Below, one piece after another: positions 17,173 through 63,935 of a DNA stretch of 64,000 bases (position 1 is the first letter of the stretch; the number at the start of each line of letters is the position of its first letter). A program made the translations under genes and the position numbers. This DNA is from Schmidtea nova (Eukaryota), in the NCBI GenBank assembly GCA_044892505.1, contig CM097884.1, positions 127,534,001 through 127,598,000 of the forward strand, in the 5' to 3' direction. The notes beneath the pieces were generated by a model that saw only the letters and a list, made by a program, of their open reading frames with translations, did no database searches and was not told where the DNA came from.

Positions 17173-17524
17173 ATTAAAAAAGATCAAAGGTGAAATAAAA
17201 AGATAATTATGATAAATATTTATTATTTATTATTATTTATTTTATTTATCTTTCATAAAATAATAATTATTATTAGTAAGTAGTATTATTTTATTTATTT
17301 ATTATTATATAATTTTATTTATTTATTCACTTTGTTTAATTTTAATTGTGTTTATTATTTTATTTTATTTATTATTTTATTTTATTTATTATTTTTATTT
17401 TATTTATAATTTATATTTATTTTTTTAATTTGGTTCATTTTATTTTTTAAGAAAATATTATTTTATTATTTTATTTGTTTTTTTTTGTTAAATATATTTT
17501 TATATATCATACTAATTTCATTTT

Positions 17525-18372
17525 ATTTAACTATCTTATCAATTACATAATTTTTTTGTTTCCTCTTAGTATTTTCTGTTATTATTTTTATATTCTTTTA
17601 TTCAAGTAGTATTTTATTTAGTTATCTATTAAAATTATAATTAATAATATTATTCATTTTATTATTTGTTATTATCTTTCATTCTATTTTTTATTTTTTT
17701 CTAAAGATTATTAATATAGTAATAAATATAATATTAATTATAACAAAAATCACAATTATAATGAATAAATTTACAATGCACTTGCCACATCAATTGAGTT
17801 TTTAATAATGAAATGTACTTGATTATTTTTAAATTTATATTCGGTAAAATATTATTTATACTTGTTCATCAGGTCGTTGAATGATGATAATATAATTATA
17901 TGCTACAATAAAGCCTATATAAACAAGACAGACATTGTAATATTTGTTTTTAAACGTCTTTTCCAATGACATCTCATTTTGACATTAAATGATAAACAAT
18001 TTAATATACTCTTTTATTGAATAAACGAACGTCATAGATGACAATATTTTCATTGTCGCCCTCTTGCGCTGTTATGGTCCGTGATTCACATGCCCACAGT
18101 TTTGTTTCATATTTATCAATTCATATAATTCACTCGGCTGACATAATAAACAAAAAATAACAGTTAAAATGTTGAAATTGAATTATTTTATTTTAAAACT
18201 AATTTCAAAGAGTTAAATTTTTTTATCAATGATATTATGCAGGCGATTGAATGTGCAAACCTAATGGTGATTGGCATTTATTCATAGGGGAATGAGCGGG
18301 GGTCAATGAGCATAGCATTTCTCTAATCCATTTAGAATGTAATTTAATCAACTCTTGGAAATCAAATGGTCA
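17525..18372 (+). repeat. ~850-bp dispersed repeat; inverted copy at ~43319-44210
   Basis: Near-identical reverse-complement match; in this copy it leads directly into the Penelope-like ORF. Confidence 0.85.
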
Positions 18373-18438
18373 AAATATCAGGTTAATTGGTAAGATTCTT
18401 TTCAATATTGTATCTAATGGTGTATAAATAATTCTGAG

Positions 18439-19981
18439 GTGCAATTAAAGCATAAATATGATTCCAATATTAAGAAGTTGAATAATTTAAGGAGATTGTT
18501 CGGTATTTATAAATTTGATGTTAAGGATACTTTTTTAAATCTGAGCAAAGTTGTTTTGATTGATGACGAGGAACCTATTTTAAAATATGATCTCAATCAG
18601 GGTAGTAAAAGTCGAAAAGAAAAAACTAAATTTTGCGCAAAAATTGAATGATTGTACTATGTGAGTACGACTGATTATATTAATAAAAATAAAAAAACAG
18701 GATATAAAGGATTTTTTGATCTTGAAAGATTTGGCTAAAAAGATATAAATGTTTATAAATATGATAAAGGCAATGGGTTGGTGATCTTGGACCACGATGT
18801 GTATGTGAACAAATTGAATGATGTTTTGTTATCTCCACAGTTTGTAAAAGTAGGCATTAGCCGTAAAAATGGGAAGTTACCTCCTCTGAAAGATAAACTA
18901 ACGTTTCAGAATTGTTGAAAAAATTGTCTGATAATAAAAATATTGATGTAGATTTGGTGAGATTCATATATCCGAAAGGATCCCAACCAGCAAACCCTTA
19001 TGGACTTGCAAAAGTGCATAAAGAATGTATGTCTATGAGACCAGTGTTATCGACTGTAAGAACTGCTCAATACAAAATAGCCAAAATTTTGGATGGGTTA
19101 TTAAAATCTTTAATAATTAAGTTTGAATGTAGGGATAGCTTTGAGTTTGTTTGGTTTGTTGCTCAGTTGAACAAAAACACTGAGAATGAAATTATGGTTT
19201 CTTTTGATGTTTGTAGTCTTTTCACTAATGTTCCATTGGCGGAAACTATTGATTTATGTTGCAACATATGGAATGAAAATGAGTTTGAACATGCAAATAT
19301 GTATAAAATAGCTTTTTTTAGGTTACTCGAATTTGCATTGTCGAATGTTAATTTTCTGTTTAAGAATAAATGGTACAGACAATGGTATGGTGTCGCTATG
19401 GGTTATCCATTAGCTCCAACAATGGCTTCTATCTATATGTCTAGTTTGGAAATGAAAATCTCTTTCTACAATCTTATTAAACCAGCTGTGTACAAACGTT
19501 ATAAGGATGATATTTCTTTGGTCTTTGAAAGTCGTAAACATGTAAAGCCTTTTTTGAAGTACATGAATGGTTTGTATACGAACATTAAATTCATTTGTGA
19601 GGAAGAAAAAATGCCATCGATTGCGTTTTTAGATTTACTCATTCAACGCAAGACGAAACATTATAAGACTAAATATATAGAAAATCGACTGATACTGGTC
19701 TGTATACTACGTCTGAGAATGTTTGTGAATTTAAATATAAGACGAATATGGTGAGAGGATTGGTGTTTAGTGCTTGGTCACTATCTTCTACGTTTGTTAA
19801 TTCAGTAAAAAGTATCGAGGATATGGTTGAGTTGTTACTTAAAAATGGCTATTCTAAATCTTTTCTTGAGAAAATGACAAAAGTGACTGTCGGTAAGTTA
19901 ATGTTGAATGCTAAAGATCTTTGTATGGGTGTCTCTGAATCTAAGGTGCCTCTATTGATTCTGATGAAAGTACTTTGTTAA
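18439..19981 (+). pseudogene. Penelope-like element reverse transcriptase, frameshifted; GIY-YIG domain not seen
   Basis: Motifs DKGNGLVILD, YGLAKVHKE..MRPVLS, SFDVCSLFTNVP, YGVAMGYPLAPTMA, YKRYKDD, IAFLDL, NGYSKSF in consecutive frames. Confidence 0.9.
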
Positions 19982-20008
19982 TTTCGGAAAGTGACAAAAA
20001 TTGATGCT

Positions 20009-20047
20009 TGCCTGAAGATGACTGCTATTTAGTCGAAATTAATCGCA
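20009..20047 (+). ncRNA. Minimal type I hammerhead ribozyme at the 3' end of the Penelope-like element
   Basis: UGC-CUGAAGA-U-GACU(gcuauuu)AGUC-GAA-AUUAAU-C|GCA: intact core, palindromic stem III, AUC cleavage triplet. Confidence 0.8.
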
Positions 20048-20139
20048 TTTATTTACAATATAATCAGTTGGCGTTTATTTATTATTAAATCATTGTCATC
20101 AGAGGCGCGCCAAGCTGTTAGGACTCCTGCGTGCAAAAT

Positions 20140-20520
20140 TTTAAACAATAAAAATATTTTTAATTTAAATAAATTAATCTTAAAAATATAATATTCTCTT
20201 TTTATAAAATAATATTTTTTTAAAGAATATTTTATAAATATTTTTATATTTATAAACAACAGAATGATTGAAAACAAAATCCATAATCCCCAATTGAAAA
20301 TGCTCTAATACTCGAGTACAGAAAAGACGGTGGCATTTCGCCAATGACATTTGAAAAATTAAACGAGTATAGAACACAAATCAAAAGAAAAAAAATAAAC
20401 ATCATCAACAATCACATCAGTTAATTTACTTAAACCGCAAAAAATGAGGCAAACACACACACTCAAAACTCTCACACTCACATATTCACAAACATCGATA
20501 TGACTGAAAACAACGCTAAA
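20140..20520 (-). mobile_element. Inverted partial copy of the hammerhead-ORF monomer
   Basis: Matches ~60650-61030 in the same orientation; directly abuts the plus-strand copy starting ~20525. Confidence 0.85.
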
Positions 20521-20524
20521 TCCC

Positions 20525-23500
20525 TAATATTATATTTTTAAGATAAATTAATTTAAATTAAAAACTTTTTTATCGTTTTAAATTCTTTGGCTATTTTATA
20601 GAATTTATAATATGCATTTTATTTTAAAAATTATTATTAACCCTCAAAAGCACAACAGAGCCTGTTAGTCTCTAATTGAATTCAATTTACTGATAACTTT
20701 ATTGATATTTATTAAATTTTTCTAAAATGTCTTGTATTCGTCTATTTTCAATATTTAAGTATAAAAAATCAAAGCAGGCCAAAAAATTTTGCTTGATAAT
20801 GTAATATAATTAAATTTCATAAAAAAATCGCACAAACGCACAACAGTGCTTATGGAGCTCTGCATATTGACAGTGTGAATCACTATATAGATAATTGCAC
20901 ACCAACGCTATCGCTTGAATCATAGAAGACTGAGCAGTCAATCGGCGCATCAATTGGCGCATTTGCAAGTAAAAATATTCAAAAGGTTTTTTGAATAAAG
21001 TTGATAGTGTATAAGTTGTATAAGTTTGTTTGAATAGCCGATTGGAATTTCGGTATCCTGTTTTATTGATAAAATTGGTAAGTTAGTTTTTATTTTCTAA
21101 GTTTACATTTTTATATACAATTAGAAAACATTTAGAAAAGTAAAAATATGGCCAACGTCCCATTGAGTAAAATGCAACTAGAAGAGATTTTAGAGAATTG
21201 GACCGACGATGAAATTGACTTACTTGAAGATGAAGCTAATCAAGCATCAGATTCTGAAATTAAACTTGTGATGGAGATGTCAAATGAAGAAGATGAAATA
21301 TCGTAAGATGAAAACGAACAGTTTGATATACCTGTAAATAACCAAAAATATAACGGTAAAGATGGAACTGAGTGGATGGCCAACCCATATGGGAGTTCCC
21401 GCTCAAAATCGTGCAATATCATAAAAGGGAAACTTGATACAGTTTTTTGTATGTTTATTGATGAGACAGTCTGTGAATTGATTTTAAAATATACGAACAA
21501 AGAAGCAGTAACAATGTATGGTCAATCAAGAAAGTGGAAACCAATAGGCAGTAATTTTTTTGTCAACAATGCACTATGACGACAAGATGACCGAAAAAAA
21601 AGATAAAGTTATGTCGGAAATAAATAAATATTATGACTTAACCAAAGGAGGTGTTGATACTTTTGATCAACTTATTCACGAATATATGATAAAGAGAAAA
21701 ACTAATCGTTGGCCATTAGCTTTTTTTTATGAATATACTAGATGCCGCTGGAATAGCTGCATATGTTCTGTGGATTAAAAAATTTCCGTATTGGAACCAA
21801 AGGAAACCCAACATACGAAATTTATTCCTGCGAGAATTGGGCGAATCTCTAGTTGAACCTTACATAAGAAAGAGGAAAAATAACAAAAACTTGCACTAAT
21901 CGTCTCAAAGTGCAATAAAAACCTATCTTGGAGCTTTGCCTACTGAAAGTTCTTCTAGCAGACCTTCAACTTCCACTTCAGATGAAAGCATCCGAAAAAG
22001 GAAACGGTGTCATTTGTGTCCATACGCAAAATCCAAAATGCTGACACATTTTAAATGCGATAATTGCCAAAAAAATGTGTGTAATGAACATTCAATAAAA
22101 GCAATAAGTTGTTCGTCATGCCAAAATAATTAGTTATTATTTTGTTAAATTATATATTTAATTATGTTTATATATATTTTTTGAATTATGTTTTTTATTT
22201 TTTTTATATGTATATTTTTTTGAATTATTTTTTTTATTTTTATGTAAATAAAGTAATTTTTGTTCTTTAATAAATTATTTGAGTCTAATTATTATCAAAA
22301 TACAAAGAAATATGTAATAGAGACTCAGAGGCACTGTTGTTTCTAACGCTTGTAAAATAGTTGTGTTTTTTAGGGTTAATTGGTTTGGAAAATCATTTTA
22401 TTTGATTTATATTTGAATGGAAGATTAAGTAGCACCTGATAAAGAGAATTAAGTTCTCGAAATATATTGTAAAGAATATATATTTGGATTGGCGTTTGTT
22501 TTTAATTGTTTTAGTGCTGTGTTTGTTTGTTATGTATTAAAGAAAAATAATTATCCTTCAGTTGTTCCGGTATTCTTTGAAAGTCTGTGTAGGAAAAAAA
22601 TTTTATTTTAAGTGATTGAAGATGTTCGATTCATTGATCAAAGAATTTGGATTGACATTCTAGAATTGAAGATTGAAAGGCGTAATCACCTAGTCTTTGT
22701 ATTGCCTCTGATTGGATTACTAATGTGTAGAATGAAAGATAATTTTTTTCATTCTAAATGTATAGAGTTTTATATTGCCAAATTAGTATTTTGATTTAAT
22801 GATGAGTTTTACAATCGTGCTGATTATTTCTCTTATTCTATTATTTATGAATTAATTGGTGTGATTGTTGGCGATTCTAAGTTTTCTGTATTGCTCTTTG
22901 TTCTGTTCTCGTTTATTTTTTCAAACGTCATGGGTGAAATACCACATACATTGGAAAAGACTGCCCGTCTTCTCTGTATTCGAGTTTCAGAGCGGAGTCA
23001 ATTAATGGGATTTAGCGTTGTTTCCAATCATATCAATGTTTGTGAATATGTGAGTGTGAGAGTTTTGAGTGTGTGTGTTTGCCTCATTTTTTTGCGGTTT
23101 AAGTAAATTAACTGATGTGATTGTTGATGATGTTTATTTTTTTCTTTTGATTTGTGTTCTATACTCGTTTAATATTTCAAATGTCATGGGCAAAACGCTA
23201 CATACTTTGGAGAAGACTGACAGTCTTTTCTGTACTCGAGTATTAGAGCATTTTCAATTGTGGATTATGGATTTTGTTTTCAATCATTCTGTTGTTTATA
23301 AATATAAAAATATTTATAAAATATTCTTTAAAAAATATTTTTTTTATAAAAAAAGAGAATATTATATTTTTAAGATTAATTAATTAAAATTAAAATTTTT
23401 TTTATCGTTTTAAATTCTTTGGCTATTTTATAGAATTTATAATATGCATTTTACTTTTAAAATATTTATTACTTTGTTTGGAAAATCATTTTGTTTGATT

Positions 23501-23600
23501 TATATTTGGATGTAAGATTGAGTAACACCTGATGAAGAGAATTAAGTTCTCGAAATATATTGGGCAGAATATATATTTGTATTGGCGTTTGTTTTTAATT
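20525..23600 (+). mobile_element. Older, decayed copy of the hammerhead-ORF tandem element (monomer ~1093 bp), interrupted by piggyBac
   Basis: Hammerhead-like cores at 22436 (CUGAUAA, mutated) and 23529 (CUGAUGA); ORFs 22861-23106 and 23069-23383 are frameshifted homologs of 61593-62429. Confidence 0.85.
20641..22375 (+). mobile_element. Internally deleted piggyBac transposon with transposase remnants (21148-22133)
   Basis: TTAA TSDs, TIRs CCCTCAAAAGCACAAC / CCCTAAAAAACACAAC, YDLTKGGVDTFDQ..KRKTNRWPLAFFY motif and Cys-rich C-terminus CHLC..CDNCQKNVCNEH. Confidence 0.92.
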
Positions 23601-23681
23601 TTAATTAAAGTAAAAATTAAACTAACAACGGAATAACACATATATCATATGCAATAGTTTATGAAATTAATAGTTTACTAC

Positions 23682-28140: not shown

Positions 28141-30281
28141 AATGATACCCTTGTTTGAAGGTTTGACCTTATTTAACCTTTAAAAATTCAAATTTAAAAT
28201 TTGAATTTGAAATGAGTCATCGATGACGTCATAAAATTCAAATTTGAAATGAGTCATCGATGAGTCATAAAAATTTTTCTACCCCCTCCCCCGGGAGGAG
28301 GGGGTCTTTGTTCTTTTTCCCGCCCACGCAATGAGTCATAATGTCTTTGTTCCCGGCTCCACACATCTACCTACTTCAGAAAATAGGGATCGCAGTAGAT
28401 TTTCTTTTGCCAATAATCTACGGAAATTTTCATTTAGATATACTTTGAAGCGATCTTTATGTGGATTATCGTCAGAGACACGCGAAAACATTAACACAAT
28501 TGTCTTATTTAAGTCACGAAGATAATGAGGATATTCTTTTGAATTGAAATAATTCCCATGGCATCTACGAATGAAACTTGCGGTGGGTTTTTTCATATTG
28601 TCATAATCCGTCATTTGATAAATAATTTCCCATTGAACCATAACAGATCCCATTGAACCATAACACATCCTTGCAATCAATTGTTTCCATCTTTTTCCAA
28701 TTCAAATTCAAAATTTTTAAAATTCCCGAAAAAAACCAATTTTCCAAATTACTCGATTAATTAAACAAAAACGTTCTAGAAAAAAATCCAAAGCATTAAA
28801 GCAAAGTTCGAAAAAATCCAAATCCAAATTTACCCAATTGGATTAATAAAACAAAACTAGATTTTAGAATAATCCATTAATTCTAAATCTCAAATAAAAC
28901 CGGCAACAAAAACGCGCACACAGACGCGTATCATAAATAGCAAAAAAATAAGCGCACACAGACGCTGATAATTAAAAAAAGCAATGCGCACACAGACGCT
29001 GACATCCAGAAATCACCAGCTTGGTTTGAAATTCAAAATGTTGTGTATCTTGTTGTGCACACGTGTTTTGTTATTAATATGTAAATTTTAACTATTTAAA
29101 ATAAATTTTTTTGAGTTTTCATTGTTATAATCTGTAAATAAAATTGAAATTCCTCCAAAATGGCTAAATTCAAAATTTCAAAAATCTTACAAAAATAACG
29201 CGCGACATGTAATATCTTACTACTTTCCAGACTCATAGTAATCGCTTAATTAACTACTTTCATCTAAATTCTGAAATTATCTATACCTTCTGGCTATCAT
29301 CAAAATATAATTAATTATTTATTCTGCTCTTTAACTACCAATAATCATGTTGTCTTGATATGGATACATTGTGACTTTTCTAATTGTTTACCCAACTTGA
29401 TTTTTTTTGTTTTTCTTAACTAATTAATTAACTAATTTAAAATTTCATATTTTACTCACATTTTTCGGTTTTTGAACCTTTTTGAACGTTTTATGATAAA
29501 TCATTTTACATGTTGTAACTCCTCTATCACTTGTCCATTTCTAGATTTTAAATTGCCTGATTAATAATTTGGGTTTTTCCCAGTCTATGTTGTCATAATA
29601 TTTCCCTTTGCAATCTGTTTATTCTTGATTATGATTATACATCTCTATTTAGCTTCTTTTCAATTTTACAAAATAATTTTAGTCTTTACAACCTCAACAA
29701 TATTATATATTGAAACCTTTCTATGACGTAAAGTTCCATTTTTTGTATAAACGAAAATACTCGACGATTCTGATGAGTTAAATTTTTTCAATAAAAATAG
29801 ATACAATAAAATTATTTTTTAATAAAATTATTTTCTATTTATCATTATTTTATTATGAATCACATTTTTAAGGGGAAAGTTCTAAATTCTTGATTTAGAC
29901 TAAAATCATTTTTAATTGCAAATATTTTTTTTTAATATTAAAGGAAAGTAAAAAAATGATTTAACAAACATTTGTTAAACTAAAACTATTGAATCAATTA
30001 TAATAAAATTTATTTTTCTCATTTCAAATAAAAAAGTAATAAAACAACATGAGTATGTAGTTGTATTCTAAAATGATATCATAAAATTAATATTCTTATC
30101 ATTATTATTTTAATGATATCAAAAATCNNNNNNNNNNNNNNNNNNNNNNNNNNNNNNNNNNNNNNNNNNNNNNNNNNNNNNNNNNNNNNNNNNNNNNNNN
30201 NNNNNNNNNNNNNNNNNNNNNNNNNNNNNNNNNNNNNNNNNNNNNNNNNNNNNNNNNNNNNNNNNNNNNNNNNNNNNNNNN

Positions 30282-30660
30282 GCAAATAAGATTTTATTAA
30301 TAGAAATTGATCTCCAATTGACAAGTTGGTCTTTGGCAACCGGAAATCCTGACCTATGATAACAAGAGTTGAAATGAGCAAGCTCCATGACAGTCCGTAT
30401 TGATTGATTTCTGGTGATGGCGAATAATCGTTTAATCGAGATTGATTGTGATCCAATGTATTGATTTGTAGATTTTTTGAGTTATACATTTCAGATTTGT
30501 CTGGATAGTATATTAATATTGATTCAGTTAATGACAAGCATCTTCCAGTTTGTACGGCTTCTTTACGCATTCCAGCAACGAAACATTTCTGCAATCTACG
30601 GAACTGGCAATTGTTTCTTCTTTGAATATCGACTACGCAATCTCCACTAGAGTAGAACTG
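30282..30660 (-). pseudogene. Nuclear receptor fragment (second zinc finger plus start of LBD, NR2-like), degenerate
   Basis: DCVVDIQRRNNCQFRRLQKCFVAGMRKEAVQTGR with two expected Cys lost; downstream LSIGDQFLLIKS resembles the LBD signature. Confidence 0.75.
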
Positions 30661-30665
30661 ATAAT

Positions 30666-32559
30666 TGTTGTCATTTGATGAAAACGAGTCGCTGTGAATG
30701 TCTTGAGTGAATTGGCATATCAAATCATTGTTAACAGCTTGCATTTTTTTTGATCAGCGTGAAAAAGTGAAAATTATGTAAATATTAAAACAACATCCAA
30801 TTTAATCCATTTAATAATTAATTAATTTAAAAGATTGAAAATTTAATCTAAGGCACTACAATAGCCCCCGCCGAAGTACGCGGAGCGTCTCTAAGCTAGA
30901 AAATGGATTTGGGTGTTGGGTGAGTCACTGAAGGTGATAATCGGAGAGATATTGAGGGAGTTTACGTGTTCGCCTAGAAGAGAATGGCGGGTTGTCTTGA
31001 GAAAGTTGGGTATTTGTCGTTTCTGTAAGGGTCTTCAGTTGTTCCGTGTCTTCTTGAATGTCTTCATCTATAGGATCTTCTTTCATGATATGGTAATTTG
31101 GTCGTTCATCATACTCAAGTGTGCAAAAGGATGGTTTTAATCTTGATAGGTTGACCATAATGTGATTGTTATCAATTTCTAGTTTCGCTGTGTTTTTGTA
31201 TAGTTCGATGATGCGGAATGGGCCTTTGTATCTAGGTTTGAGGTTTGATGAATCAATTGTCTTTATCCATGCGTGGGTGGCAGATGAAAGTGATTGTGGT
31301 ATATACGGTTTGTATGATGTAGAATATGTGAAAGATGGATTTGTATCAAGACTCAAAAAATGATTGCGAGTGAGGTTGATTTCCTCTAGTGACGATTCGT
31401 TCTGTAGATCTATGAGTTCGTTGGGCATGGATGTGTTGGAACCGAACAAAAGTTGTGAAGGTGACACGCCACTTGAGCGGTTGGGAGTGTTGTGCCACCC
31501 GAGCAAGACGAATGGTAATGCTTTGGTCCACGAAGTTGTCGTTGAGAGTATTCTGAGGGATGCTTTCAAAGTCCGGTGGGCGCGTTCCACAAGACCGTTT
31601 GTTTGTGGGTGATATGAGCTGGTACGTAAATGACTGATGCCGAGGCTGGTGGTCAGATGATCGAAAAGGTCTGATTCAAATTGTGTTCCTTGGTCTGTGA
31701 TTATGGCGGTTGGGATTCCATAACGCGAAAACCAAGTGGATATTAAGGCGTGTGCAACCGTTTTTGCGGTGATGTCAGAAACTGGAATAGCCTCGAACCA
31801 GCGTGTTTTCCTATCGATCATTGTCAGTATATAGCAGAATCCGTCGTCTGCGGGGAGTTTGCCTACTAAGTCGATGTGGAGTATGTCGAATCTTGAACCA
31901 GTCGGGAATGGTGTGATTGGTGGTTTAGTATGTTTGTTCACTTTGTGTTGTTGGCAGCCTTTACATTCAGAGACCCACTGTTTAACGTCTTTAAATAATG
32001 AGAACCAAGTGACCTTTTGTCGTATGAGATGGTATGTGGACTTAATTCCTGGATGGTGTAGATTATGAATCGCGAAGAATGCTTCTTTCCTGAGTAACGA
32101 GTGCAAAATTGGTCTAAGAGTGTTTTTATACGTTGTGTCATAATGTATACCGTCTATTATCTCAAGCGAGTCTTTGAAGCGGGCGAGGTCAGCTGTCGTT
32201 GGTGGAGTCGAACGGAGAATTTGTTGGGTGAAAACTGGTGTAGAGGTAATTGATGCAGCAATGTTTCTAGAAAGATAATCGGCGACCACATTATCTTTGC
32301 CCGAAACGTGAACAAATTTAATGTCAAAAGTTGATAGGTATGTTATCTGACGATGTACTCTGTTCGATGGGTCTTTCATGGTAAGGCAGTGGATGAATGT
32401 CTTGAGTGAATTGGCATATCAAATCATTGTTAACAGCTTGCATTTTTTTTGATAAGCGTGAAAAAGTGAAAATTATGTAAATATTAAAACAACATCCAAT
32501 TTAATCCATTTAATAATTAATTAATTTAAAAGATTGAAAATTTAATCTAAGGCACTACA
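30666..32559 (-). mobile_element. Deleted Ty3/Gypsy element with short LTRs (3' LTR 30666-30860; 5' LTR ~32394-32559, truncated)
   Basis: ~165-bp direct repeat starting TGTAGTG on minus; purine-rich GGCGGGGGC before the 3' LTR; flanks ATAAT/ATCAT may be a TSD. Confidence 0.7.
30925..32379 (-). CDS. Gypsy pol C-terminus: end of RNase H and complete integrase
   Basis: HVSGKDNVVADYLSR; HHCC (HNLHHPG..CKGC); DLVG, TDQGTQFES, YHPQTNGLVERAH; LKPRYKGPFRI (GPY/F); NLSRLKP. Confidence 0.95.
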   Translation of the reverse strand: MKDPSNRVHRQITYLSTFDIKFVHVSGKDNVVADYLSRNIAASITSTPVFTQQILRSTPPTTADLARFKDSLEIIDGIHYDTTYKNTLRPILHSLLRKEAFFAIHNLHHPGIKSTYHLIRQKVTWFSLFKDVKQWVSECKGCQQHKVNKHTKPPITPFPTGSRFDILHIDLVGKLPADDGFCYILTMIDRKTRWFEAIPVSDITAKTVAHALISTWFSRYGIPTAIITDQGTQFESDLFDHLTTSLGISHLRTSSYHPQTNGLVERAHRTLKASLRILSTTTSWTKALPFVLLGWHNTPNRSSGVSPSQLLFGSNTSMPNELIDLQNESSLEEINLTRNHFLSLDTNPSFTYSTSYKPYIPQSLSSATHAWIKTIDSSNLKPRYKGPFRIIELYKNTAKLEIDNNHIMVNLSRLKPSFCTLEYDERPNYHIMKEDPIDEDIQEDTEQLKTLTETTNTQLSQDNPPFSSRRTRKLPQYLSDYHLQ

Positions 32560-33506: not shown

Positions 33507-35679
33507 CCCCTGCTAATCCCAAAGGATCAAAGATTCTAGCTAAACAACTAAGAAATCCTCGTTTCGAGAGACATTGTTGACTTGGTGGCTTGACATCGTA
33601 ACCAAACTTATCCTCTGCCGCCACCCAAACTAGTCCCAGGGTTTTTACTGCCACCTTGTTCTCCTCGTTCAAACTTAATAACTTTGATATCCTCTCTAAA
33701 GGGATAGTTTCTAATACCTTTTTGTCATTAGTGAGCCATTTGTTCGTAACCATTCCTGCCTTCTCCCAAATACCAATAATCTCATCCTTGATCCTAACCG
33801 CCTCCTCGACCGATTGAAAAGAGTCCATCGTGTCATCCATGTACGTGGATTCTATTATTGTTTCTGCCGCCCTCGGAAACCTTTCTCGAAATCTCTCCGC
33901 ATTTCGTCTGGTGACTAGCTGTGCTAGAAACGGAGATATGTTTAGTCCGAAGACTAGCCGTTCGAATTCAAAACCCTCAGTTTTTCCATCTTCCTTCCAA
34001 ATGAATCTTAAGTATTTTCTATCCTCTGGATTTACCTTTATCTGGAGGTACATTTCTTGTATATCACAAGCAATCGCCACTGAATGTTTTCTGAATCGTA
34101 ATAGTATCTCAAACAAATCATTTTGTAGCTTTGGTCCTTGCTCAATAGTATCATTTAAATTAATACCGTTACTTTTCGCTGCTGCATCAAAGACTATTCT
34201 CATCTTGGTTGTCTCCTTGTCCATTTTTATCACCGGAAAATGTGGCAACCACCATCTTGTCTCACGAAATTCGCTCTCTGCCAACACCCTAATATACTTT
34301 TTTCGCACGTAGTCATTGATTACCTCTTTGTAGCTTTCTTTTAACCTACTGTCTTTCGCCAACCGATTGCCTAGACTCCTCAGACGCGTCTCCGCCATTT
34401 TCATATTCTCTTGAAGTTGATACTTGTTCTCCCTCCATAACAAGCTAACCGTGAACCTTCCATCCTCGCACGACATACCTTCGATCGCCTTTTGCATTAA
34501 TATTCCTTCACTCTGACTGAACTGATTCTTTTCAATGTGAGTTTCCTCAATTTCCCAAAATTGCCGCATCTGGTTCTCCAATCTCTCTGTTTTAGAAAAA
34601 TAGCTCTGGACAAAATGAGAGTGTTGCGGAGCTTGATCTCCATTGATCTTGCCCAGACATGTCCATCCGAGAGGCGTCAGTCTGGCAACCGGCTCATCCA
34701 TCATCCTTCCTACTTCTCGAATAGATCTGTGCAAATGGGGATAGTCGGCCCCAACTAAAACATCTATCTGCGGTCTTTTCCCAAGAACCGGGAATCGAAT
34801 ATCCTTTAGGTGCTCCCAGTTATACGCCAGCTTTTGCCAATTGCATGCTCTTAAGTCCCCCGTGACGCTTTTGACGACCAGAGCCTTAAAGTTGACTTTC
34901 ACCTTGTTATTATTGCTTGCCAACATCACCTCTATCGGCCTCGTTTCCAACATTTCCGATTTCCCCCCAATCACGCCAACTGGAATATTTTCCCATTGTC
35001 CCCCAACGCCTAATTTCTGAGCAACCCAATCACTAATGTAACTCACATTACTTGCATCGTCAAGTAATGCATTTACTCGGAATTCCTTCCCTTTATTAAT
35101 TAATTTGATCGGAATCGTTCTCAATGGCACATACATGTTCTGACTTTGTTCTGCGTGACAGGTCACCATTGACGTATTTTTATTCTCATCTTTCTTTTGA
35201 CCGTCATTTATTTTGACCCCTGGGCTATGCAGTAAGAAATGATGTTTTAACTTACAGTTTTCATTTTTACATTGACTGGGTTTCCCACAGTTCCTAACCA
35301 TGTGACCTGCCGACAGACAATTAAAACATAACCCGTTATTTTTCACAAACTCATGACGCTCTTTCGCATCATACCTTAAAAAGTCTGGGCATCGGTTTAA
35401 ATAATGTTCTCCTCTGCATTTCTTACATTTTAGTGTCGTTTTTCGTTCTCCACCAGCTTCTACCTTCGGATTGTTATCCACGAAATTTGTAACCCTCTTC
35501 TTATTTTCAATCTCCTTTCTATTTCCTGGCTTTCGCTCTCCAAACAATATATTCAAAGCTTTGCGATGCCTGTCAGCTTCTCTTTTTACCCATTCTGCCA
35601 AGGTTTGTACATTTGCCTCCTTCCCTGACTCACAATTGCGTGCCCACTGTATCAGCATGGTTTCCGGTAACTTTTTCAA
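33507..35679 (-). pseudogene. BEL/Pao gag C-terminus, protease and RT, 3'-truncated at the start of RNase H
   Basis: Three Cys motifs (CKKCRGEH..C, CFNCLSAGH..C, C..C..HHFLLH), ALLDDASNVSYI, WWLPHFPV, RIVFDAAAK, DIQEMYLQI, YMDD, RIFDPLG; codons after ~33507 run into unrelated repeat. Confidence 0.93.
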
Positions 35680-60385: not shown

Positions 60386-60659
60386 TTGTAATAATAATAA
60401 TAACAACTTATAAAAAATAACTTATAAAAAGAACTTATAAAAAAAATGACAATCCAAATATATATTTTGCACAATATATTTCGAGAACTTAATTCTCTTC
60501 ATCAGGTGCTACCCAATCTTACATCGAAATATAAATCACTTAAATCGATTTATTCGAACAAATTAGTATTAATTTTTAAAATAAAATATATATTTTAAAT
60601 TCTATTATAGTCAAAAAATTTATATCGTTTAAAAATTTAAAAATTTAAATAAATCAATC

Positions 60660-61466
60660 TTAAAAATATAATATTCTTTTATTTTTATACAAAAAAAATA
60701 TTTTTTTTAAGAATATATTATAAATATTTTCATATTTATAAACAACAGAATGATTGTAAACGAAATCCATAATCCCCAATTGAAAATGCTCTAAAACTCG
60801 AGTACAGAAAAGACGGTCAGTCTTGTCCAAAGTATGTGGCATTACACCCATGACATTTGAAAAATTAAACGAGTATAGAACACAAATCAAAAGAAGAAAA
60901 TAAACATCATCAACAACCACATCAGTTAATTTACTTAAACCGCAAAAAATGAGGCAAACACACGGACTCAAAACTCTCATACTCACATATTCACAAACAA
61001 CGATATGACTGAAAACAACGCTAAATCCCATTAATTGACTCCGCTCTGAAACTCGAATACAGAGAAGACGGGCAGTCTTTTCCAATGTATGTGGCATTTC
61101 ACCCATGACGTTTGAAAATATAAACGAGAACAGAGCAAAGAGCAATACAGAAAACTTAGAATCGCCAACAATCACATCAATTAATTCATAAACAATAGAA
61201 TAAGAGAAGGAATCAGCACAAGTGTAAACCTCATCATTAAATCGAAATACTAATTTGACAATATAAAACTCTATACATTTAGAATTATAAAAATTAAATA
61301 CAAACATTTTCCTAGACAAACTTTCACAGAATACCGGAACAACTGACGGATTATTATCTTTCTTTAATACATAACACAACCAGCATGGCACTAATATAAT
61401 TAACAACAAATGACAATCCAAATATATATTTTGCACAATATATTTCGAGAACTTAATTCTCTTCAT
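60660..61466 (-). CDS. Second copy of the monomer ORF (268 aa; extra base in an A-run shifts the C-terminus)
   Basis: Identical to 61593-62429 up to KKIFF. Confidence 0.55.
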   Translation of the reverse strand: MKRIKFSKYIVQNIYLDCHLLLIILVPCWLCYVLKKDNNPSVVPVFCESLSRKMFVFNFYNSKCIEFYIVKLVFRFNDEVYTCADSFSYSIVYELIDVIVGDSKFSVLLFALFSFIFSNVMGEMPHTLEKTARLLCIRVSERSQLMGFSVVFSHIVVCEYVSMRVLSPCVCLIFCGLSKLTDVVVDDVYFLLLICVLYSFNFSNVMGVMPHTLDKTDRLFCTRVLEHFQLGIMDFVYNHSVVYKYENIYNIFLKKIFFLYKNKRILYF

Positions 61467-61592
61467 CAGGTGCTACCCAATCTTACATCGAAATATAAAT
61501 CACTTAAATCGATTTATTCGAACAAATTAGTATTAATTTTTAAAATAAAATATATATTTTAAATTCTATTATAGTCAAAAAATTTATATCGT

Positions 61593-62429
61593 TTAAAAAT
61601 TTAAAAATTTAAATAAATCAATCTTAAAAATATAATATTCTTTTATTTTTATACAAAAAAATATTTTTTTTAAGAATATATTATAAATATTTTCATATTT
61701 ATAAACAACAGAATGATTGTAAACGAAATCCATAATCCCCAATTGAAAATGCTCTAAAACTCGAGTACAGAAAAGACGGTCAGTCTTGTCCAAAGTATGT
61801 GGCATTACACCCATGACATTTGAAAAATTAAACGAGTATAGAACACAAATCAAAAGAAGAAAATAAACATCATCAACAACCACATCAGTTAATTTACTTA
61901 AACCGCAAAAAATGAGGCAAACACACGGACTCAAAACTCTCATACTCACATATTCACAAACAACGATATGACTGAAAACAACGCTAAATCCCATTAATTG
62001 ACTCCGCTCTGAAACTCGAATACAGAGAAGACGGGCAGTCTTTTCCAATGTATGTGGCATTTCACCCATGACGTTTGAAAATATAAACGAGAACAGAGCA
62101 AAGAGCAATACAGAAAACTTAGAATCGCCAACAATCACATCAATTAATTCATAAACAATAGAATAAGAGAAGGAATCAGCACAAGTGTAAACCTCATCAT
62201 TAAATCGAAATACTAATTTGACAATATAAAACTCTATACATTTAGAATTATAAAAATTAAATACAAACATTTTCCTAGACAAACTTTCACAGAATACCGG
62301 AACAACTGACGGATTATTATCTTTCTTTAATACATAACACAACCAGCATGGCACTAATATAATTAACAACAAATGACAATCCAAATATATATTTTGCACA
62401 ATATATTTCGAGAACTTAATTCTCTTCAT
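61593..62429 (-). CDS. 278-aa hydrophobic protein of unknown function encoded by the monomer
   Basis: 837-nt ORF covering ~87% of the monomer; internal duplication SNVMG(E/V)MPHTL(E/D)KT; several hydrophobic segments. Confidence 0.6.
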   Translation of the reverse strand: MKRIKFSKYIVQNIYLDCHLLLIILVPCWLCYVLKKDNNPSVVPVFCESLSRKMFVFNFYNSKCIEFYIVKLVFRFNDEVYTCADSFSYSIVYELIDVIVGDSKFSVLLFALFSFIFSNVMGEMPHTLEKTARLLCIRVSERSQLMGFSVVFSHIVVCEYVSMRVLSPCVCLIFCGLSKLTDVVVDDVYFLLLICVLYSFNFSNVMGVMPHTLDKTDRLFCTRVLEHFQLGIMDFVYNHSVVYKYENIYNIFLKKIFFCIKIKEYYIFKIDLFKFLNF

Positions 62430-62436
62430 CAGGTGC
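62396..62436 (-). ncRNA. Minimal type I hammerhead ribozyme; identical copies at 61433-61473 and 60469-60509
   Basis: GCAC-CUGAUGA-A-GAGAA(uuaag)UUCUC-GAA-AUAUAU-U|GUGC; 4-bp stem I, 5-bp stem II, palindromic stem III, AUU triplet. Confidence 0.78.
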
Positions 62437-63122
62437 TACCCAATCTTACATCGAAATATAAATCACTTAAATCGATTTATTCGAACAAATTAGTATTAAT
62501 TTTTAAAATAAAATATATATTTTAAATTCTATTATAGTCAAAAAATTTATATCGTTTAAAAATTTAAAAATTTAAATAAATCAATCTTAAAAATATAATA
62601 TTCTTTTATTTTTATACAAAAAAATATTTTTTTTAAGAATATATTATAAATATTTTCATATTTATAAACAACAGAATGATTGTAAACGAAATCCATAATC
62701 TCCAATTGAATTTTACTGTTGAGGCCTCCGGCGATCCGCTTAGATTTATTAATATTTTGTAAATTATTCATATTTAGATAATTAATTTAAATATAATTGA
62801 TGAAAAATTTTGTGAGTAAAAAGTGACGAAATATTTCAAGTATATACTATATAAAGGTGAATTTTATTAACCGACCAATCAGAATCGAGATAGGATAGGC
62901 AAATACATGCACACATACTGCACACATAATATACCTTTGTTTATGTGTGTTTGACGTCACGATATTGCTTTGTATCGTGACAAAGACATGACATGTGCTT
63001 ATCATGCATTGATCACGCACTGGTCATGCCTTTGTGATGAAAATAATAATATTTATAATTAATAATAATATTTATAATTAATAATAATAAAAATAAAAAT
63101 TAATAAAAATAATAAAATACAT

Positions 63123-63524
63123 TTATTGCTTTAAATAATCGACAACAGCAGACAAGCACCCTTTATAGGCACACATACAATGATCTTTATAGGGACATGA
63201 AATGTTTTCAGGAACATATTCAACTTCTTTAAAATTATATTTAATTAATCTTAATTTGGGGAAATACTTCTTCAAAACATACATATTTTCATTATCGGTA
63301 ACATAGAAAATAGCTCCTTTATCTGTGATATCATCCATTATACATTTTGGGCAAAAATAATCTTGTCCTTCAAACGATTCTATACGATCAGGCCATAAAG
63401 ATAAATCACTGTATATATAATACTGAGGTGTGAAAATATTATTGACATTCATAATACATAATTCCTTAATTGTTGTTCCACCCATTTCATTATATCCATA
63501 AAAATCGATAAAATAACAAGACAT
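63123..63524 (-). CDS. 133-aa Polinton-associated protein; N-terminal IDFYG..IKEL and C-terminal Cys/His cluster
   Basis: Intact ORF adjacent to and co-oriented with the adenain-like protease; function not recognised with certainty. Confidence 0.6.
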   Translation of the reverse strand: MSCYFIDFYGYNEMGGTTIKELCIMNVNNIFTPQYYIYSDLSLWPDRIESFEGQDYFCPKCIMDDITDKGAIFYVTDNENMYVLKKYFPKLRLIKYNFKEVEYVPENISCPYKDHCMCAYKGCLSAVVDYLKQ

Positions 63525-63556
63525 TTTTTCAAATAAAGTTTATTAAAATAAATTGT

Positions 63557-63935
63557 TTATAACATTGATTTCAACCATGCAAGGCAATGTTCACCACAAG
63601 TGATTGTTAAAGGATGCTGATACCGAATTCTATTATACACAATAGGTTTACCGATAGTTTGTAGTTTTCGAACAAGTAAATTCGGATAATAATATCCAAA
63701 GGGATCAAATACATGTATTCGATCTGGTTTCACATAAACTGCAATCCAATGTTCACCGCCCAATGTAGATGTCTGAGTATTTACAATGATGGCTTGATTC
63801 ATTTTCAAATAAGGTATTTCATCTAGTGGAAATACTCCAATAAATTGATTTCCCAATAGTTTTTTACCTTGTTGTAATACCTGAAAAGAACTATTTAAAA
63901 ATAAATTAACTAATCAATTAAAAATCTTACTCCAT
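63557..63935 (-). CDS. Adenain-like Polinton/Maverick cysteine protease with a predicted 40-nt intron (63930-63891)
   Basis: FIGVFPLD, VNT..GGEHW, FDPFG, YQ..TCGEHC (His/Asp/Gln/Cys); splicing gives MDSFQVLQQGKKLLGNQF. Confidence 0.85.

What the first reader, a model, noticed from the sequence alone, without database searches (positions are those of the whole stretch)
60440..62712. Protein-coding retrozyme-like tandem: ~963-nt monomers, each with one hammerhead and a 278-codon ORF
Seen: 963/964-bp head-to-tail units, each with a complete hammerhead core on the same strand as an ORF filling ~87% of the unit. With roughly 7% stop probability per codon on this T-rich strand (rough estimate), ~270 open codons are very unlikely by chance. 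Established: metazoan non-LTR retrozymes are tandem type I hammerhead repeats that yield circRNAs, rely on Penelope-like elements, and are described as short and non-coding; palindromic stem III works in dimeric form. Inference: this is a genome-integrated ~1-kb coding circRNA replicon, in size and gene density reminiscent of viroid-like coding circles.
Basis: partly seen in the sequence, partly recalled or inferred. Interest (0 to 1): 0.93.

Follow-up and report, generated by a model that had tools for sequence, protein, structure and literature searches.

The report
RT-less Penelope-like tandem element with hammerhead
The 963-bp tandem is real and is best read as a non-autonomous relative of Penelope-like retrotransposons in a flatworm-like genome, carrying their minimal hammerhead and a strongly folded RNA, while its long open reading frame shows no sign of encoding a conserved protein.

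Summary
Window 60441-62712 is 2.36 head-to-tail units of 963/964 bp, about 99.9% identical. Each unit has a hammerhead-type motif and a 278/268-codon ORF on the minus strand.

The motif misses every Rfam hammerhead model. It does fit the published "minimal" hammerhead of Penelope-like elements (PLEs): 4-bp helix I, 6-bp helix II with one unpaired base before it, and a 6-nt palindromic helix III. A second motif of identical geometry lies just 3' of a PLE reverse-transcriptase remnant in the same window, with compensatory helix changes.

A diverged second locus (20137-23607) is a partial tandem with an inverted 5'-truncated copy. Both loci end 32-42 nt past the predicted cut site. These are published PLE insertion hallmarks, as is a start codon inside the hammerhead.

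The sense RNA is unusually structured (z about -7 to -8). It has two long hairpins kept by compensatory changes.

The ORF is longer than chance allows. However, dN/dS is about 1, there is no third-position bias, no homologue and no confident fold, and older copies are broken.

Verdict: a non-autonomous PLE derivative (retrozyme-like). A coding circRNA replicon is not supported.

The parts
60441..62712 (-). Tandem array, 2.36 head-to-tail units of 963/964 bp
   Evidence: offset identity 1.00; units 99.6-99.9% identical
62400..62712 (-). 5'-truncated first unit (starts at unit position about 683)
61437..62399 (-). Monomer 1 between predicted cut sites (963 nt). The sense RNA is strongly folded.
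   Evidence: MFE -249.5 kcal/mol, z -7 to -8.4, 72% paired, 62 G-U pairs; antisense -134 kcal/mol, z -2.7
60473..61436 (-). Monomer 2 between predicted cut sites (964 nt)
60441..60472 (-). 32-nt extension beyond the last predicted cut site (the 'tail'-like 3' end of the insertion)
   Evidence: compare PMC8557442 and PMC11167929
62396..62436 (-). Minimal type-I hammerhead-like motif, copy 1. Helix I 4 bp, core, 1 unpaired A, helix II 6 bp, GAAA, 6-nt palindrome, U17. Cut predicted at 62400/62399.
61433..61473 (-). Hammerhead-like motif, copy 2
60469..60509 (-). Hammerhead-like motif, copy 3
61593..62429 (-). ORF of 278 codons. Its AUG lies inside the hammerhead core, and the predicted cut is 30 nt into the ORF.
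60660..61466 (-). ORF of 268 codons in the second unit. It has a different C-terminal end because of the single 1-nt length difference between units.
62556..62771 (-). 71-codon ORF that starts in the 5' flank and runs in frame into the truncated first unit
61911..62198 (-). Long hairpin H1 (sub-repeat 1). The same hairpin occurs 963 nt downstream in monomer 2.
61606..61904 (-). Long hairpin domain H2 (sub-repeat 2 plus an AT-rich hairpin)
60315..60447 (.). (AAT)n-type microsatellite abutting the 3' end of the array
22377..23607 (+). Diverged copy B, main part. It holds about 1.1 units plus a second hammerhead region and is 86-93% identical to the array. Together with 20526-20640 copy B amounts to about 1.25 units.
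22439..23405 (+). ORF remnant in copy B. It is broken by 4 in-frame stops, 6 frame-shifting indels and one 131-nt insertion, and the start codon is changed in one of the two motif copies. The longest open runs are 104 and 103 codons.
20526..20640 (+). 5' part of copy B, separated from the rest by a nested piggyBac-like element
20641..22376 (+). Nested, internally deleted piggyBac-like transposon with TTAA duplication (a neighbour, not part of the family)
20137..20524 (-). Copy C, an inverted 5'-truncated partial unit (unit positions about 438-836) directly against the 5' end of copy B. Its ORF remnant has 4 frame-shifting indels.
18814..19963 (+). Penelope-like reverse-transcriptase remnant with two frameshifts and no endonuclease domain
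20008..20048 (+). Second minimal hammerhead-like motif, about 50 nt after the RT remnant on the same strand, with the same geometry as the array motif
58895..60316 (+). Right LTR of a neighbouring LTR element, 100% identical to 46325-47746. It ends 125 bp from the array.

Best explanation
The array is an insertion of a non-autonomous retroelement that has no reverse transcriptase and derives from, or parasitises, Penelope-like elements (PLEs). The host genome looks like that of a planarian or other flatworm.

Shown:
- It is a dispersed family, with at least two loci in the window.
- Each unit carries a PLE-type minimal hammerhead. A motif with the same geometry and core sits next to a PLE RT remnant.
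- Both loci are head-to-tail partial multimers with a 5'-truncated first unit, and one has an inverted 5' copy.
- Both end 32-42 nt past the predicted cut site, inside the 5' end of the ORF.
- One locus abuts a microsatellite.
- The sense RNA is far more structured than shuffles or the antisense strand. Its two long hairpins are kept by compensatory and G-U-compatible changes.

Inferred:
- The element is transcribed as a multimer and copied into DNA by a PLE RT/endonuclease supplied in trans. Reverse transcription starts internally, just 3' of the hammerhead, which would explain the shared ends and the tandem form.
- Paired hammerheads of neighbouring units may cut the RNA, and the monomers may circularise as in retrozymes. 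Published PLE work found cleavage dispensable for insertion in vitro.
- The ATG-in-hammerhead ORF is a layout inherited from PLEs. The frame has been kept free of stops, but the amino-acid sequence is not detectably constrained. The conserved product is most likely the folded RNA rather than a protein.
For: Array and units.

Motif:
- Anatomy.
- It matches the min-HHR description in PMC4209133: helix I 4-5 bp, long helix II, an unpaired base 5' of stem II, a small palindromic helix III, dimeric action.
- The min-HHR descriptor hits only the array copies and 20012(+) in the whole window. All share one extra base, a 15-nt helix II hairpin and a 6-nt palindrome.
- In the ungapped alignment of unit and PLE-side motif, the core is invariant and 4 pairs changed on both sides yet stay paired.
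- Local alignment of the two tails scores 41 against 27 +/- 4.6 in shuffles, with 2 of 500 reaching it.

PLE identity of the RT: homologues carry RT plus GIY-YIG.

Insertion architecture:
- Second locus with an inverted 5' copy and a partial tandem.
- Both loci end within 10 nt of each other.
- Microsatellite at the array's 3' end.
- These are hallmarks listed in PMC8557442. Internal RT initiation and a start codon within the hammerhead are described in PMC11167929.

RNA fold:
- Searches give the fold and the strand asymmetry.
- 95% of cells are paired, 7 pairs changed on both sides, and covariation exceeds all 500 shuffles. Slid controls give 37-50% paired.

No RT or endonuclease in the unit.
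Against: - No Rfam hammerhead model matches, even at E <= 10.
- The relaxed descriptor has a chance rate of 0.08-0.39 hits per 64 kb. The motif alone is therefore weak, and its support rests on context and on a single second family.
- Helix I is broken in both copy-B motifs, and the core is altered in one, without compensation. This is as expected for dead copies but gives no support.
- The PLE remnant lacks its endonuclease part. Its link to the neighbouring motif is by position and a borderline alignment.
- No target-site duplication was recognised.
- Only one window was available, so copy number and the existence of an intact partner PLE are unknown.
- The stop-free frame remains unexplained if the element is purely non-coding.
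Confidence: 0.72

Rival explanations
1. One reading: a genome-integrated, protein-coding retrozyme. The roughly 1-kb monomer would be released by hammerhead cleavage, circularised, and translated into a 278-aa protein that serves the element.
For: - The stop-free frame is far beyond chance.
- It predates the split of the copies, because copy B has only 4 in-frame stops.
- The ORF, the hammerhead and the structured RNA are all on one strand.
- The complete ORF exists only on uncut or re-joined RNA, because the predicted cut lies 30 nt inside it.
- Self-cleaving ribozymes can promote cap-independent translation (abstract of PMC13725137).
Against: - dN/dS is 0.98 (array versus B), 1.45 (versus C) and 0.9-1.2 between the two internal sub-repeats, the same as in shifted frames.
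- Array-lineage changes are 3 synonymous to 18 non-synonymous.
- Substitutions are flat over codon positions.
- Copies B and C are broken many times.
- The only difference in length between the two units already changes the last roughly 20 codons.
- Searches found no homologue: one search gave none, and one search gave one low-complexity hit at E 1.3e-4 among 1.84e9 proteins.
- There is no Pfam match.
- AlphaFold mean pLDDT is 39.
- The composition is that of a translated T-rich strand, with V+L+F+I at 43%.
Confidence: 0.1
2. A small-RNA or hairpin-RNA locus. The selected products are the two long hairpins (for example siRNA/piRNA precursors, possibly domesticated). The hammerhead-like motif and the ORF are incidental.
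For: The hairpins of about 200-290 nt are conserved by compensatory changes, and folding is strand-specific.
Against: - The family shows the insertion architecture of a mobile element at two loci.
- High self-pairing is also the published norm for retrozyme RNAs (PMC7229834).
- No Rfam family matches.
- No expression data are available.
Confidence: 0.08
3. An ordinary local tandem duplication, satellite or assembly artefact, in which a hammerhead-like string and an ORF occur by chance.
For: - The units are near-identical, so the array could be very recent or mis-assembled.
- The loose hammerhead descriptor hits by chance once per roughly 3-13 windows.
- Rfam finds nothing.
Against: - A second, 8-14% diverged multimeric locus exists 37 kb away.
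- A motif of the same geometry sits beside a PLE RT, with compensatory changes.
- The ORF length has P of about 2e-7 under a null that keeps the duplication.
- The RNA fold has z of -7 to -8.
Confidence: 0.05
4. Part of a host or Maverick/Polinton gene. The units would be repeated exon-intron blocks of a gene starting at the TATA-like box and ATG near 62771, next to an adenain-like protease ORF.
For: A CCAAT/TATA-like stretch and an ATG at 62771 read in frame into the first unit. A Peptidase_C5 ORF lies at 63557-63856 on the same strand.
Against: - Only 20 codons lie outside the repeat.
- The other locus of the family has different flanks.
- There is no homologue for the product.
- The array boundary falls inside the unit, as for a 5'-truncated insertion.
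Confidence: 0.03

Closest known systems
Non-autonomous Penelope-like elements and PLE pseudo-LTR tandems (Craig et al. 2021, PMC8557442)
   Same: 5'-truncated head-to-tail multimers, an inverted 5'-truncated copy at one locus, a short extension at the insertion end, a microsatellite next to the insertion, similarity to an autonomous element confined to the hammerhead/tail region, and no RT of its own.
   Different: The described non-autonomous examples are Chlamys elements of green algae, which lack canonical hammerheads. Here the element is from an animal, has a minimal hammerhead, and keeps a long ORF unrelated to RT or endonuclease.
Penelope/Poseidon-type PLEs, e.g. the anole element studied in PMC11167929, and flatworm Cercyon PLEs with min-HHRs (PMC4209133)
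   Same: A minimal type-I hammerhead with an unpaired base before a long helix II, a short helix I and a palindromic helix III. The ORF start codon lies inside the hammerhead, with the cut site 26-30 nt downstream. Insertion ends fall a short way into the ORF.
   Different: The unit is 963 nt instead of 3-4 kb. The ORF has 278 codons with no RT, no GIY-YIG domain and no detectable similarity to PLE proteins.
Metazoan non-LTR retrozymes (Cervera and de la Pena 2020, PMC7229834; Li et al. 2026 preprint, 10.64898/2026.07.22.740005)
   Same: Tandem repeats with one type-I hammerhead per unit, AT-rich sequence, highly self-paired sense RNA, and proposed dependence on PLEs.
   Different: Retrozymes are 170-400 nt, carry canonical hammerheads with loop-loop contacts, and are reported as small RNAs with no ORF mentioned in the paper. 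This unit is 963 nt, has the minimal PLE-type hammerhead, and has a long open frame. Circular RNA is not shown here.
Plant LTR retrozymes (PMC4918200, PMC5680766)
   Same: Similar RNA size (600-1000 nt) and hammerhead-bounded monomers of a non-autonomous retroelement.
   Different: These have type-III hammerheads inside true LTRs with PBS/PPT, are GC-rich and non-coding, and are mobilised by LTR retrotransposons.
Coding viroid-like circular RNAs (deltavirus-like agents, PMC7936874; obelisk-type circles, from my own knowledge)
   Same: About 1 kb or a little more, extensive self-pairing, one ORF of about 200 codons, and in some cases hammerheads.
   Different: Those are RNA-only replicons with a protein conserved across relatives. 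This is chromosomal DNA with retrotransposon insertion hallmarks, and its ORF shows no amino-acid conservation.

Membership tests
PLE-type minimal hammerhead (min-HHR) | Conserved core CUGANGA ... GAAA, A15.1/U16.1, and a non-G at position 17 | tested here: met
   all core positions are present in the three array copies and in the motif at 20008-20048
PLE-type minimal hammerhead (min-HHR) | Short helix I (4-5 bp), long helix II, one unpaired base at the 5' end of stem II, a very small palindromic helix III (PMC4209133) | tested here: met
   helix I 4 bp, helix II 6 bp, one extra A, 6-nt AU palindrome
PLE-type minimal hammerhead (min-HHR) | Helices kept by compensatory changes among relatives | tested here: inconclusive
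   4 pairs changed on both sides between the unit and the PLE-side motif, with slid controls at 0-1. Only two independent families are available. In copy B, helix I is not kept.
PLE-type minimal hammerhead (min-HHR) | Location in the repeat flanking a PLE ORF | tested here: met
   the motif lies about 50 nt 3' of the RT remnant on the same strand
Canonical hammerhead (Rfam Hammerhead_1, Hammerhead_3 and related models) | Score against the curated covariance models | tested here: not met
   no hit at gathering score or at E <= 10
Hammerhead ribozyme (any) | Self-cleavage at the predicted site | not testable with these tools
   Published min-HHRs cleave poorly in vitro and need dimers or protein
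Non-autonomous Penelope-like element | Partial tandem or head-to-tail insertion with a 5'-truncated first unit | tested here: met
   2.36 units in the array and about 1.25 units at locus B
Non-autonomous Penelope-like element | Inverted 5'-truncated copy adjacent to the 5' end | tested here: met
   copy C (20137-20524) lies against copy B. Not present at the array.
Non-autonomous Penelope-like element | Defined 3' end near the hammerhead/ORF start, with a short 'tail' | tested here: met
   the two loci end at unit positions about 62 and 72, which is 32 and 42 nt past the predicted cut
Non-autonomous Penelope-like element | Sequence similarity to an autonomous PLE at the hammerhead/tail region | tested here: inconclusive
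   local alignment beats 498 of 500 shuffles. Searches show the same geometry. The PLE copy is itself a remnant.
Non-autonomous Penelope-like element | PLE RT (RT plus GIY-YIG lineage) present in the same genome | tested here: met
Non-autonomous Penelope-like element | No RT or endonuclease of its own | tested here: met
Metazoan non-LTR retrozyme | Canonical type-I hammerhead with loop 1-loop 2 contacts | tested here: not met
   helix I is open and only 4 bp, with no defined loop 1
Metazoan non-LTR retrozyme | Monomer of about 170-400 nt | tested here: not met
   963 nt, against PMC7229834
Metazoan non-LTR retrozyme | Stable, highly self-paired sense RNA | tested here: met
Metazoan non-LTR retrozyme | Accumulates as linear and circular monomer RNA | not testable with these tools
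Protein-coding gene | Open frame longer than composition allows | tested here: met
Protein-coding gene | Purifying selection: dN/dS below 1 and an excess of third-position changes | tested here: not met
Protein-coding gene | Homologues or a recognisable domain or fold | tested here: not met
Viroid-like coding circular RNA replicon | RNA-only replicon with a protein conserved among relatives | tested here: not met
   The sequence is chromosomal DNA with retroelement insertion hallmarks and has no conserved protein

The most novel reading that the evidence does not exclude
The frame is translated. In that case this would be an RT-less Penelope-like derivative that carries its own hydrophobic protein of about 30 kDa, starting at the AUG inside the hammerhead. 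The protein would be expressed from uncut multimeric or re-circularised RNA, making this the first protein-coding retrozyme-like element. The constraint would act on keeping the frame open and hydrophobic rather than on residue identity.
Probability: 0.12. Interest if true: 0.8.

Novelty: new member of a known kind. Interest (0 to 1): 0.35.

Why it matters
If the best explanation holds, this is one more family among hammerhead-bearing, PLE-dependent non-autonomous retroelements. It is useful as a clean example from a flatworm-like genome. In one window it shows the partner RT remnant, a matching minimal hammerhead, the tandem and inverted insertion forms, and an RNA fold kept by compensatory changes.

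It also shows that Rfam's hammerhead models miss this class, so genome scans will under-call it.

One real oddity is left. A 280-codon frame has been kept free of stops without any detectable constraint on the amino acids. If that frame proves to be translated, it would blur the line between non-coding retrozymes and coding viroid-like circles.

Tried and rejected
- Rfam at gathering score and at E <= 10, on the region and on the whole window: no hammerhead.
- TRF: misses the array because its longest period is 500.
- Protein searches with the ORF: Pfam; word-indexed search of 5.8e9 proteins; full HMMER against 1.84e9 representatives, one low-complexity hit at E 1.3e-4; exact-sequence look-ups of the ORF and of the neighbouring 133-aa ORF. 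Nothing usable.
- AlphaFold on the single sequence: mean pLDDT 39, so no fold search was run.
- Exact-pattern scans of metagenome and viral contigs with the conserved 28-nt block, and a protein-guided scan of metagenomes: no relatives. No copies from outside the window could be compared.
- Similarity of the ORF to PLE RT-like proteins: none.
- Hammerhead by chance: considered seriously, because loose descriptors hit 0.08-0.39 times per window. Rejected because of the second motif of identical geometry beside the PLE RT, with compensatory changes.
- ORF as a by-product of T-richness, triplet periodicity or the internal duplication: rejected.
- Target-site duplications at either locus: none recognised by eye.
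- Splice or exon model for the units: not pursued beyond inspection, because no splice predictor or cDNA was available.
- An alternative helix III hairpin with a later cut site: rejected, because helix I would then not pair.
Full report
1. OBSERVATION

The repeat is real. Self-comparison at offsets 963/964 gives identity 1.00 from 60441 to 62712, and the repeat finder and BLAST agree. That makes 2.36 head-to-tail units. They differ by a single 1-nt length change in a homopolymer run and one or two mismatches. TRF did not list the array because its longest period is 500.

On the minus strand each unit reads as follows:
- a 4-nt helix I strand;
- CUGAUGA, then one extra A;
- a 6-bp hairpin with a 3-nt loop;
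- GAAA, a 6-nt AU palindrome, then U;
- the complementary 4-nt helix I strand.

The ORF at 61593-62429 has 278 codons, and its AUG is the AUG inside CUGAUGA. The second unit has 268 codons (60660-61466), because the one length difference between units shifts the last 20 or so codons.

The open frame of 280 codons compares with 72 +/- 16 in 2000 dinucleotide shuffles. The other five frames have 17-30 stops each. About 15 stops are expected even from the ORF's own position-specific composition. A null that keeps three composition zones and the internal 255-nt duplication gives 0 of 40000 and an extrapolated P of about 2e-7. The caveat is that near-identical units are one observation, not replicates.

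2. CONTEXT

The window is AT-rich (about 27% G+C) and is mostly transposons:
- a BEL/Pao-type LTR element at about 30-38.5 kb;
- a roughly 14-kb element bounded by 1422-bp LTRs that are 100% identical (46325-47746 and 58895-60316), whose right LTR ends 125 bp from the array;
- an adenain-like protease ORF at the window edge.

A mitochondrial HSP70 fragment carried inside a retroelement ORF is 83% identical to Dugesia japonica mortalin and about 74% identical to trematode proteins. The host is probably a planarian or other flatworm.

Nothing in the window was taken for human sequence. The five N runs were left untouched.

3. THE FAMILY IS DISPERSED

BLAST of one unit against the window finds a second locus.
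- Copy B (20526-20640 plus 22377-23607, plus strand) is 86-93% identical and holds about 1.25 units. A nested, internally deleted piggyBac-like element interrupts it (20641-22376, TTAA duplication, DDE_Tnp_1_7 remnant).
- Copy C (20137-20524) is an inverted 5'-truncated partial unit lying directly against the 5' end of B.
- Both loci stop at nearly the same place in the unit, position 62 in the array and about 72 in B. That is 32 and 42 nt beyond the predicted cut site and inside the 5' end of the ORF.
- The array's 3' end abuts an (AAT)n-type microsatellite.

4. IS THE HAMMERHEAD REAL?

Evidence against:
- No Rfam hammerhead model matches, at gathering score or at E <= 10, in the region or the whole window.
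- In copy B, helix I is not kept in either motif, and the core is altered in one.

Evidence for:
- The anatomy is exactly that published for the minimal hammerheads of Penelope-like elements (PLEs). That description lists a short helix I (4-5 bp), a long helix II, an unpaired base at the 5' end of stem II, a tiny palindromic helix III, action as dimers and weak cleavage in vitro. These motifs were first sorted out in a flatworm genome (PMC4209133). This also explains the Rfam miss.
- The min-HHR descriptor finds only four sites in the window: the three array copies and one at 20012 on the plus strand.
- That fourth site lies about 50 nt after a reverse-transcriptase remnant (18814-19963, plus strand). 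Homologues of that remnant carry RT followed by GIY-YIG, the PLE architecture.
- All four sites share one geometry: one extra base, a 15-nt helix II hairpin and a 6-nt palindrome.
- In an ungapped alignment of the unit motif and the PLE-side motif, every core position is identical. Four pairs, two in helix I and two in helix II, changed on both sides and still pair. Slid controls give 0-1.
- A local alignment of the two flanking regions beats 498 of 500 shuffles.

I conclude that this is a genuine member of the PLE minimal hammerhead class. Its activity is untested.

5. WHAT THE ARCHITECTURE MEANS

PMC8557442 lists the hallmarks of PLE insertions:
- strong 5' truncation;
- partial tandems (pseudo-LTRs);
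- often an inverted 5'-truncated copy at the 5' end;
- a 30-40-bp 'tail' at an end;
- a bias for microsatellite targets.

PMC11167929 shows for a lizard PLE that:
- the ORF begins inside the hammerhead, with the cut site 26 nt after the start codon;
- reverse transcription starts internally, a short way into the ORF, which sets the insertion ends;
- hammerhead cleavage is not needed for insertion in vitro.

Every one of these features is seen here: the start codon inside the core, a cut 30 nt downstream, ends 62-72 nt into the ORF, tandem and inverted forms, and a microsatellite. The unit itself has no RT or endonuclease.

The best reading is a non-autonomous PLE derivative. In the broad sense this is 'retrozyme-like'. 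However, it fails two features of metazoan retrozymes as described, the canonical hammerhead and the 170-400 nt monomer (PMC7229834).

6. RNA STRUCTURE

The sense monomer (61437-62399, minus strand) folds to -249.5 kcal/mol, against -190 +/- 8 for shuffles (z -7; z -8.4 with 40 shuffles). It is 72% paired and has 62 G-U pairs. The antisense RNA reaches only -134 kcal/mol (z -2.7).

The fold is dominated by two long hairpins that correspond to the two 255-nt sub-repeats. I aligned both hairpins from the array with their counterparts in B and C:
- 95% of cells are paired;
- 7 pairs changed on both sides;
- many changes are one-sided and G-U compatible;
- covariation exceeds all 500 shuffles;
- slid controls give 37-50% paired.

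The effective sample is small, essentially two lineages. Even so, the signal and the strand asymmetry point to selection on the sense RNA.

7. IS THE ORF A GENE?

The frame is non-random (section 1). It is also old, because copy B, 8-10% diverged, has only 4 in-frame stops. A random frame would have 15-30, and neutral decay predicts about 3.3.

Every test for amino-acid constraint is flat:
- dN/dS is 0.98 against B (62 substitutions) and 1.45 against C (21 substitutions).
- dN/dS is 0.9-1.2 between the internal sub-repeats, no different from shifted frames.
- Array-lineage changes, polarised with B and C, are 3 synonymous to 18 non-synonymous.
- Substitutions split 24/23/19, 7/6/8 and 16/22/17 over the three codon positions.

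- Copy B's remnant has 4 stops, 6 frame-shifting indels and one 131-nt insertion, and a changed start codon in one of its two motif copies. Its longest open runs are 104 and 103 codons.
- Copy C has 4 frame-shifting indels.
- The PLE RT remnant has two frameshifts and lacks its endonuclease part.

Nothing similar to the ORF is known:
- no Pfam hit;
- nothing in the word-indexed search;
- one low-complexity hit at E 1.3e-4 in 1.84e9 representatives;
- no relatives in metagenome contigs.

The single-sequence model has pLDDT 39. The product would be 43% V+L+F+I, with several hydrophobic stretches.

I conclude that the frame has been kept open. The evidence does not show a conserved protein, and why the frame stays open is unexplained.

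8. MECHANISM, WITH STATUS

Shown: family, motif, insertion architecture, RNA fold, and absence of enzymes.

Inferred:
- The element is transcribed as a multimer.
- A PLE RT/endonuclease acting in trans recognises the hammerhead/ORF-start region.
- Reverse transcription starts just 3' of the hammerhead and produces head-to-tail multimers and occasional inverted 5' copies.
- Dimeric hammerheads between neighbouring units may cut the RNA, and monomers may circularise as in retrozymes. Nothing here requires that.

9. NOVELTY

This is a new member of a known kind. It differs from described relatives in three ways: its size, a minimal rather than canonical hammerhead in a tandem non-autonomous element, and a long maintained frame unrelated to RT.

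I noticed this. dN/dS counts were made segment by segment and only the numbers were summed.

Noticed in passing
window 35676-38510 (-), within a BEL/Pao-type element at about 30.7-38.5 kb: A 944-codon ORF strings fragments of host genes in one frame, ahead of a gag-like DUF1759. The fragments are TCP-1/cpn60, HECT, mitochondrial HSP70 (83% identical to Dugesia japonica mortalin) and ubiquitin. It looks like host exons transduced into a retroelement gag.
   Followed up: partly
window 46325-60316: A roughly 14-kb element is bounded by 1422-bp direct repeats that are 100% identical (46325-47746 and 58895-60316). It has a 952-codon gag/zinc-knuckle ORF (49616-52474) but no pol was seen. It also holds a 56-bp x 32 tandem array (53584-55391) and 39-bp repeats at 57.4-58.3 kb. 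It is probably a young non-autonomous LTR element.
   Followed up: partly
window 20641-22376 (+): An internally deleted piggyBac-like transposon with TTAA duplication and a DDE_Tnp_1_7 remnant is nested in copy B of the family.
   Followed up: yes
window 63123-63856 (-): An adenain-like Peptidase_C5 ORF (63557-63856) and an unassigned 133-codon ORF (63123-63524) lie at the window edge. They may be a fragment of a Maverick/Polinton-type element. The 133-aa protein is not on record.
   Followed up: partly
window 17524-18380 and 43310-44214: The stretch 5' of the Penelope-like RT remnant has a second, inverted copy at 92.6% identity 25 kb away. No hammerhead-like motif was found in either copy.
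   Followed up: partly
window 62965-63046 (-): An imperfect hairpin upstream of the array weakly resembles a microRNA precursor model (mir-3688, 23 bits against a gathering score of 84, E 0.17). It is most likely chance.
   Followed up: no
window 30079-30744 (-): An ORF with a partial nuclear-receptor C4 zinc finger (E 4e-7) is interrupted by an N run, close to the integrase of the BEL/Pao-type element.
   Followed up: no
window 23931 (+) and 19961 (+): Two further CUGANGA strings lie near the second locus. One resembles the start of the PLE-side motif but lacks the rest of a hammerhead.
   Followed up: no
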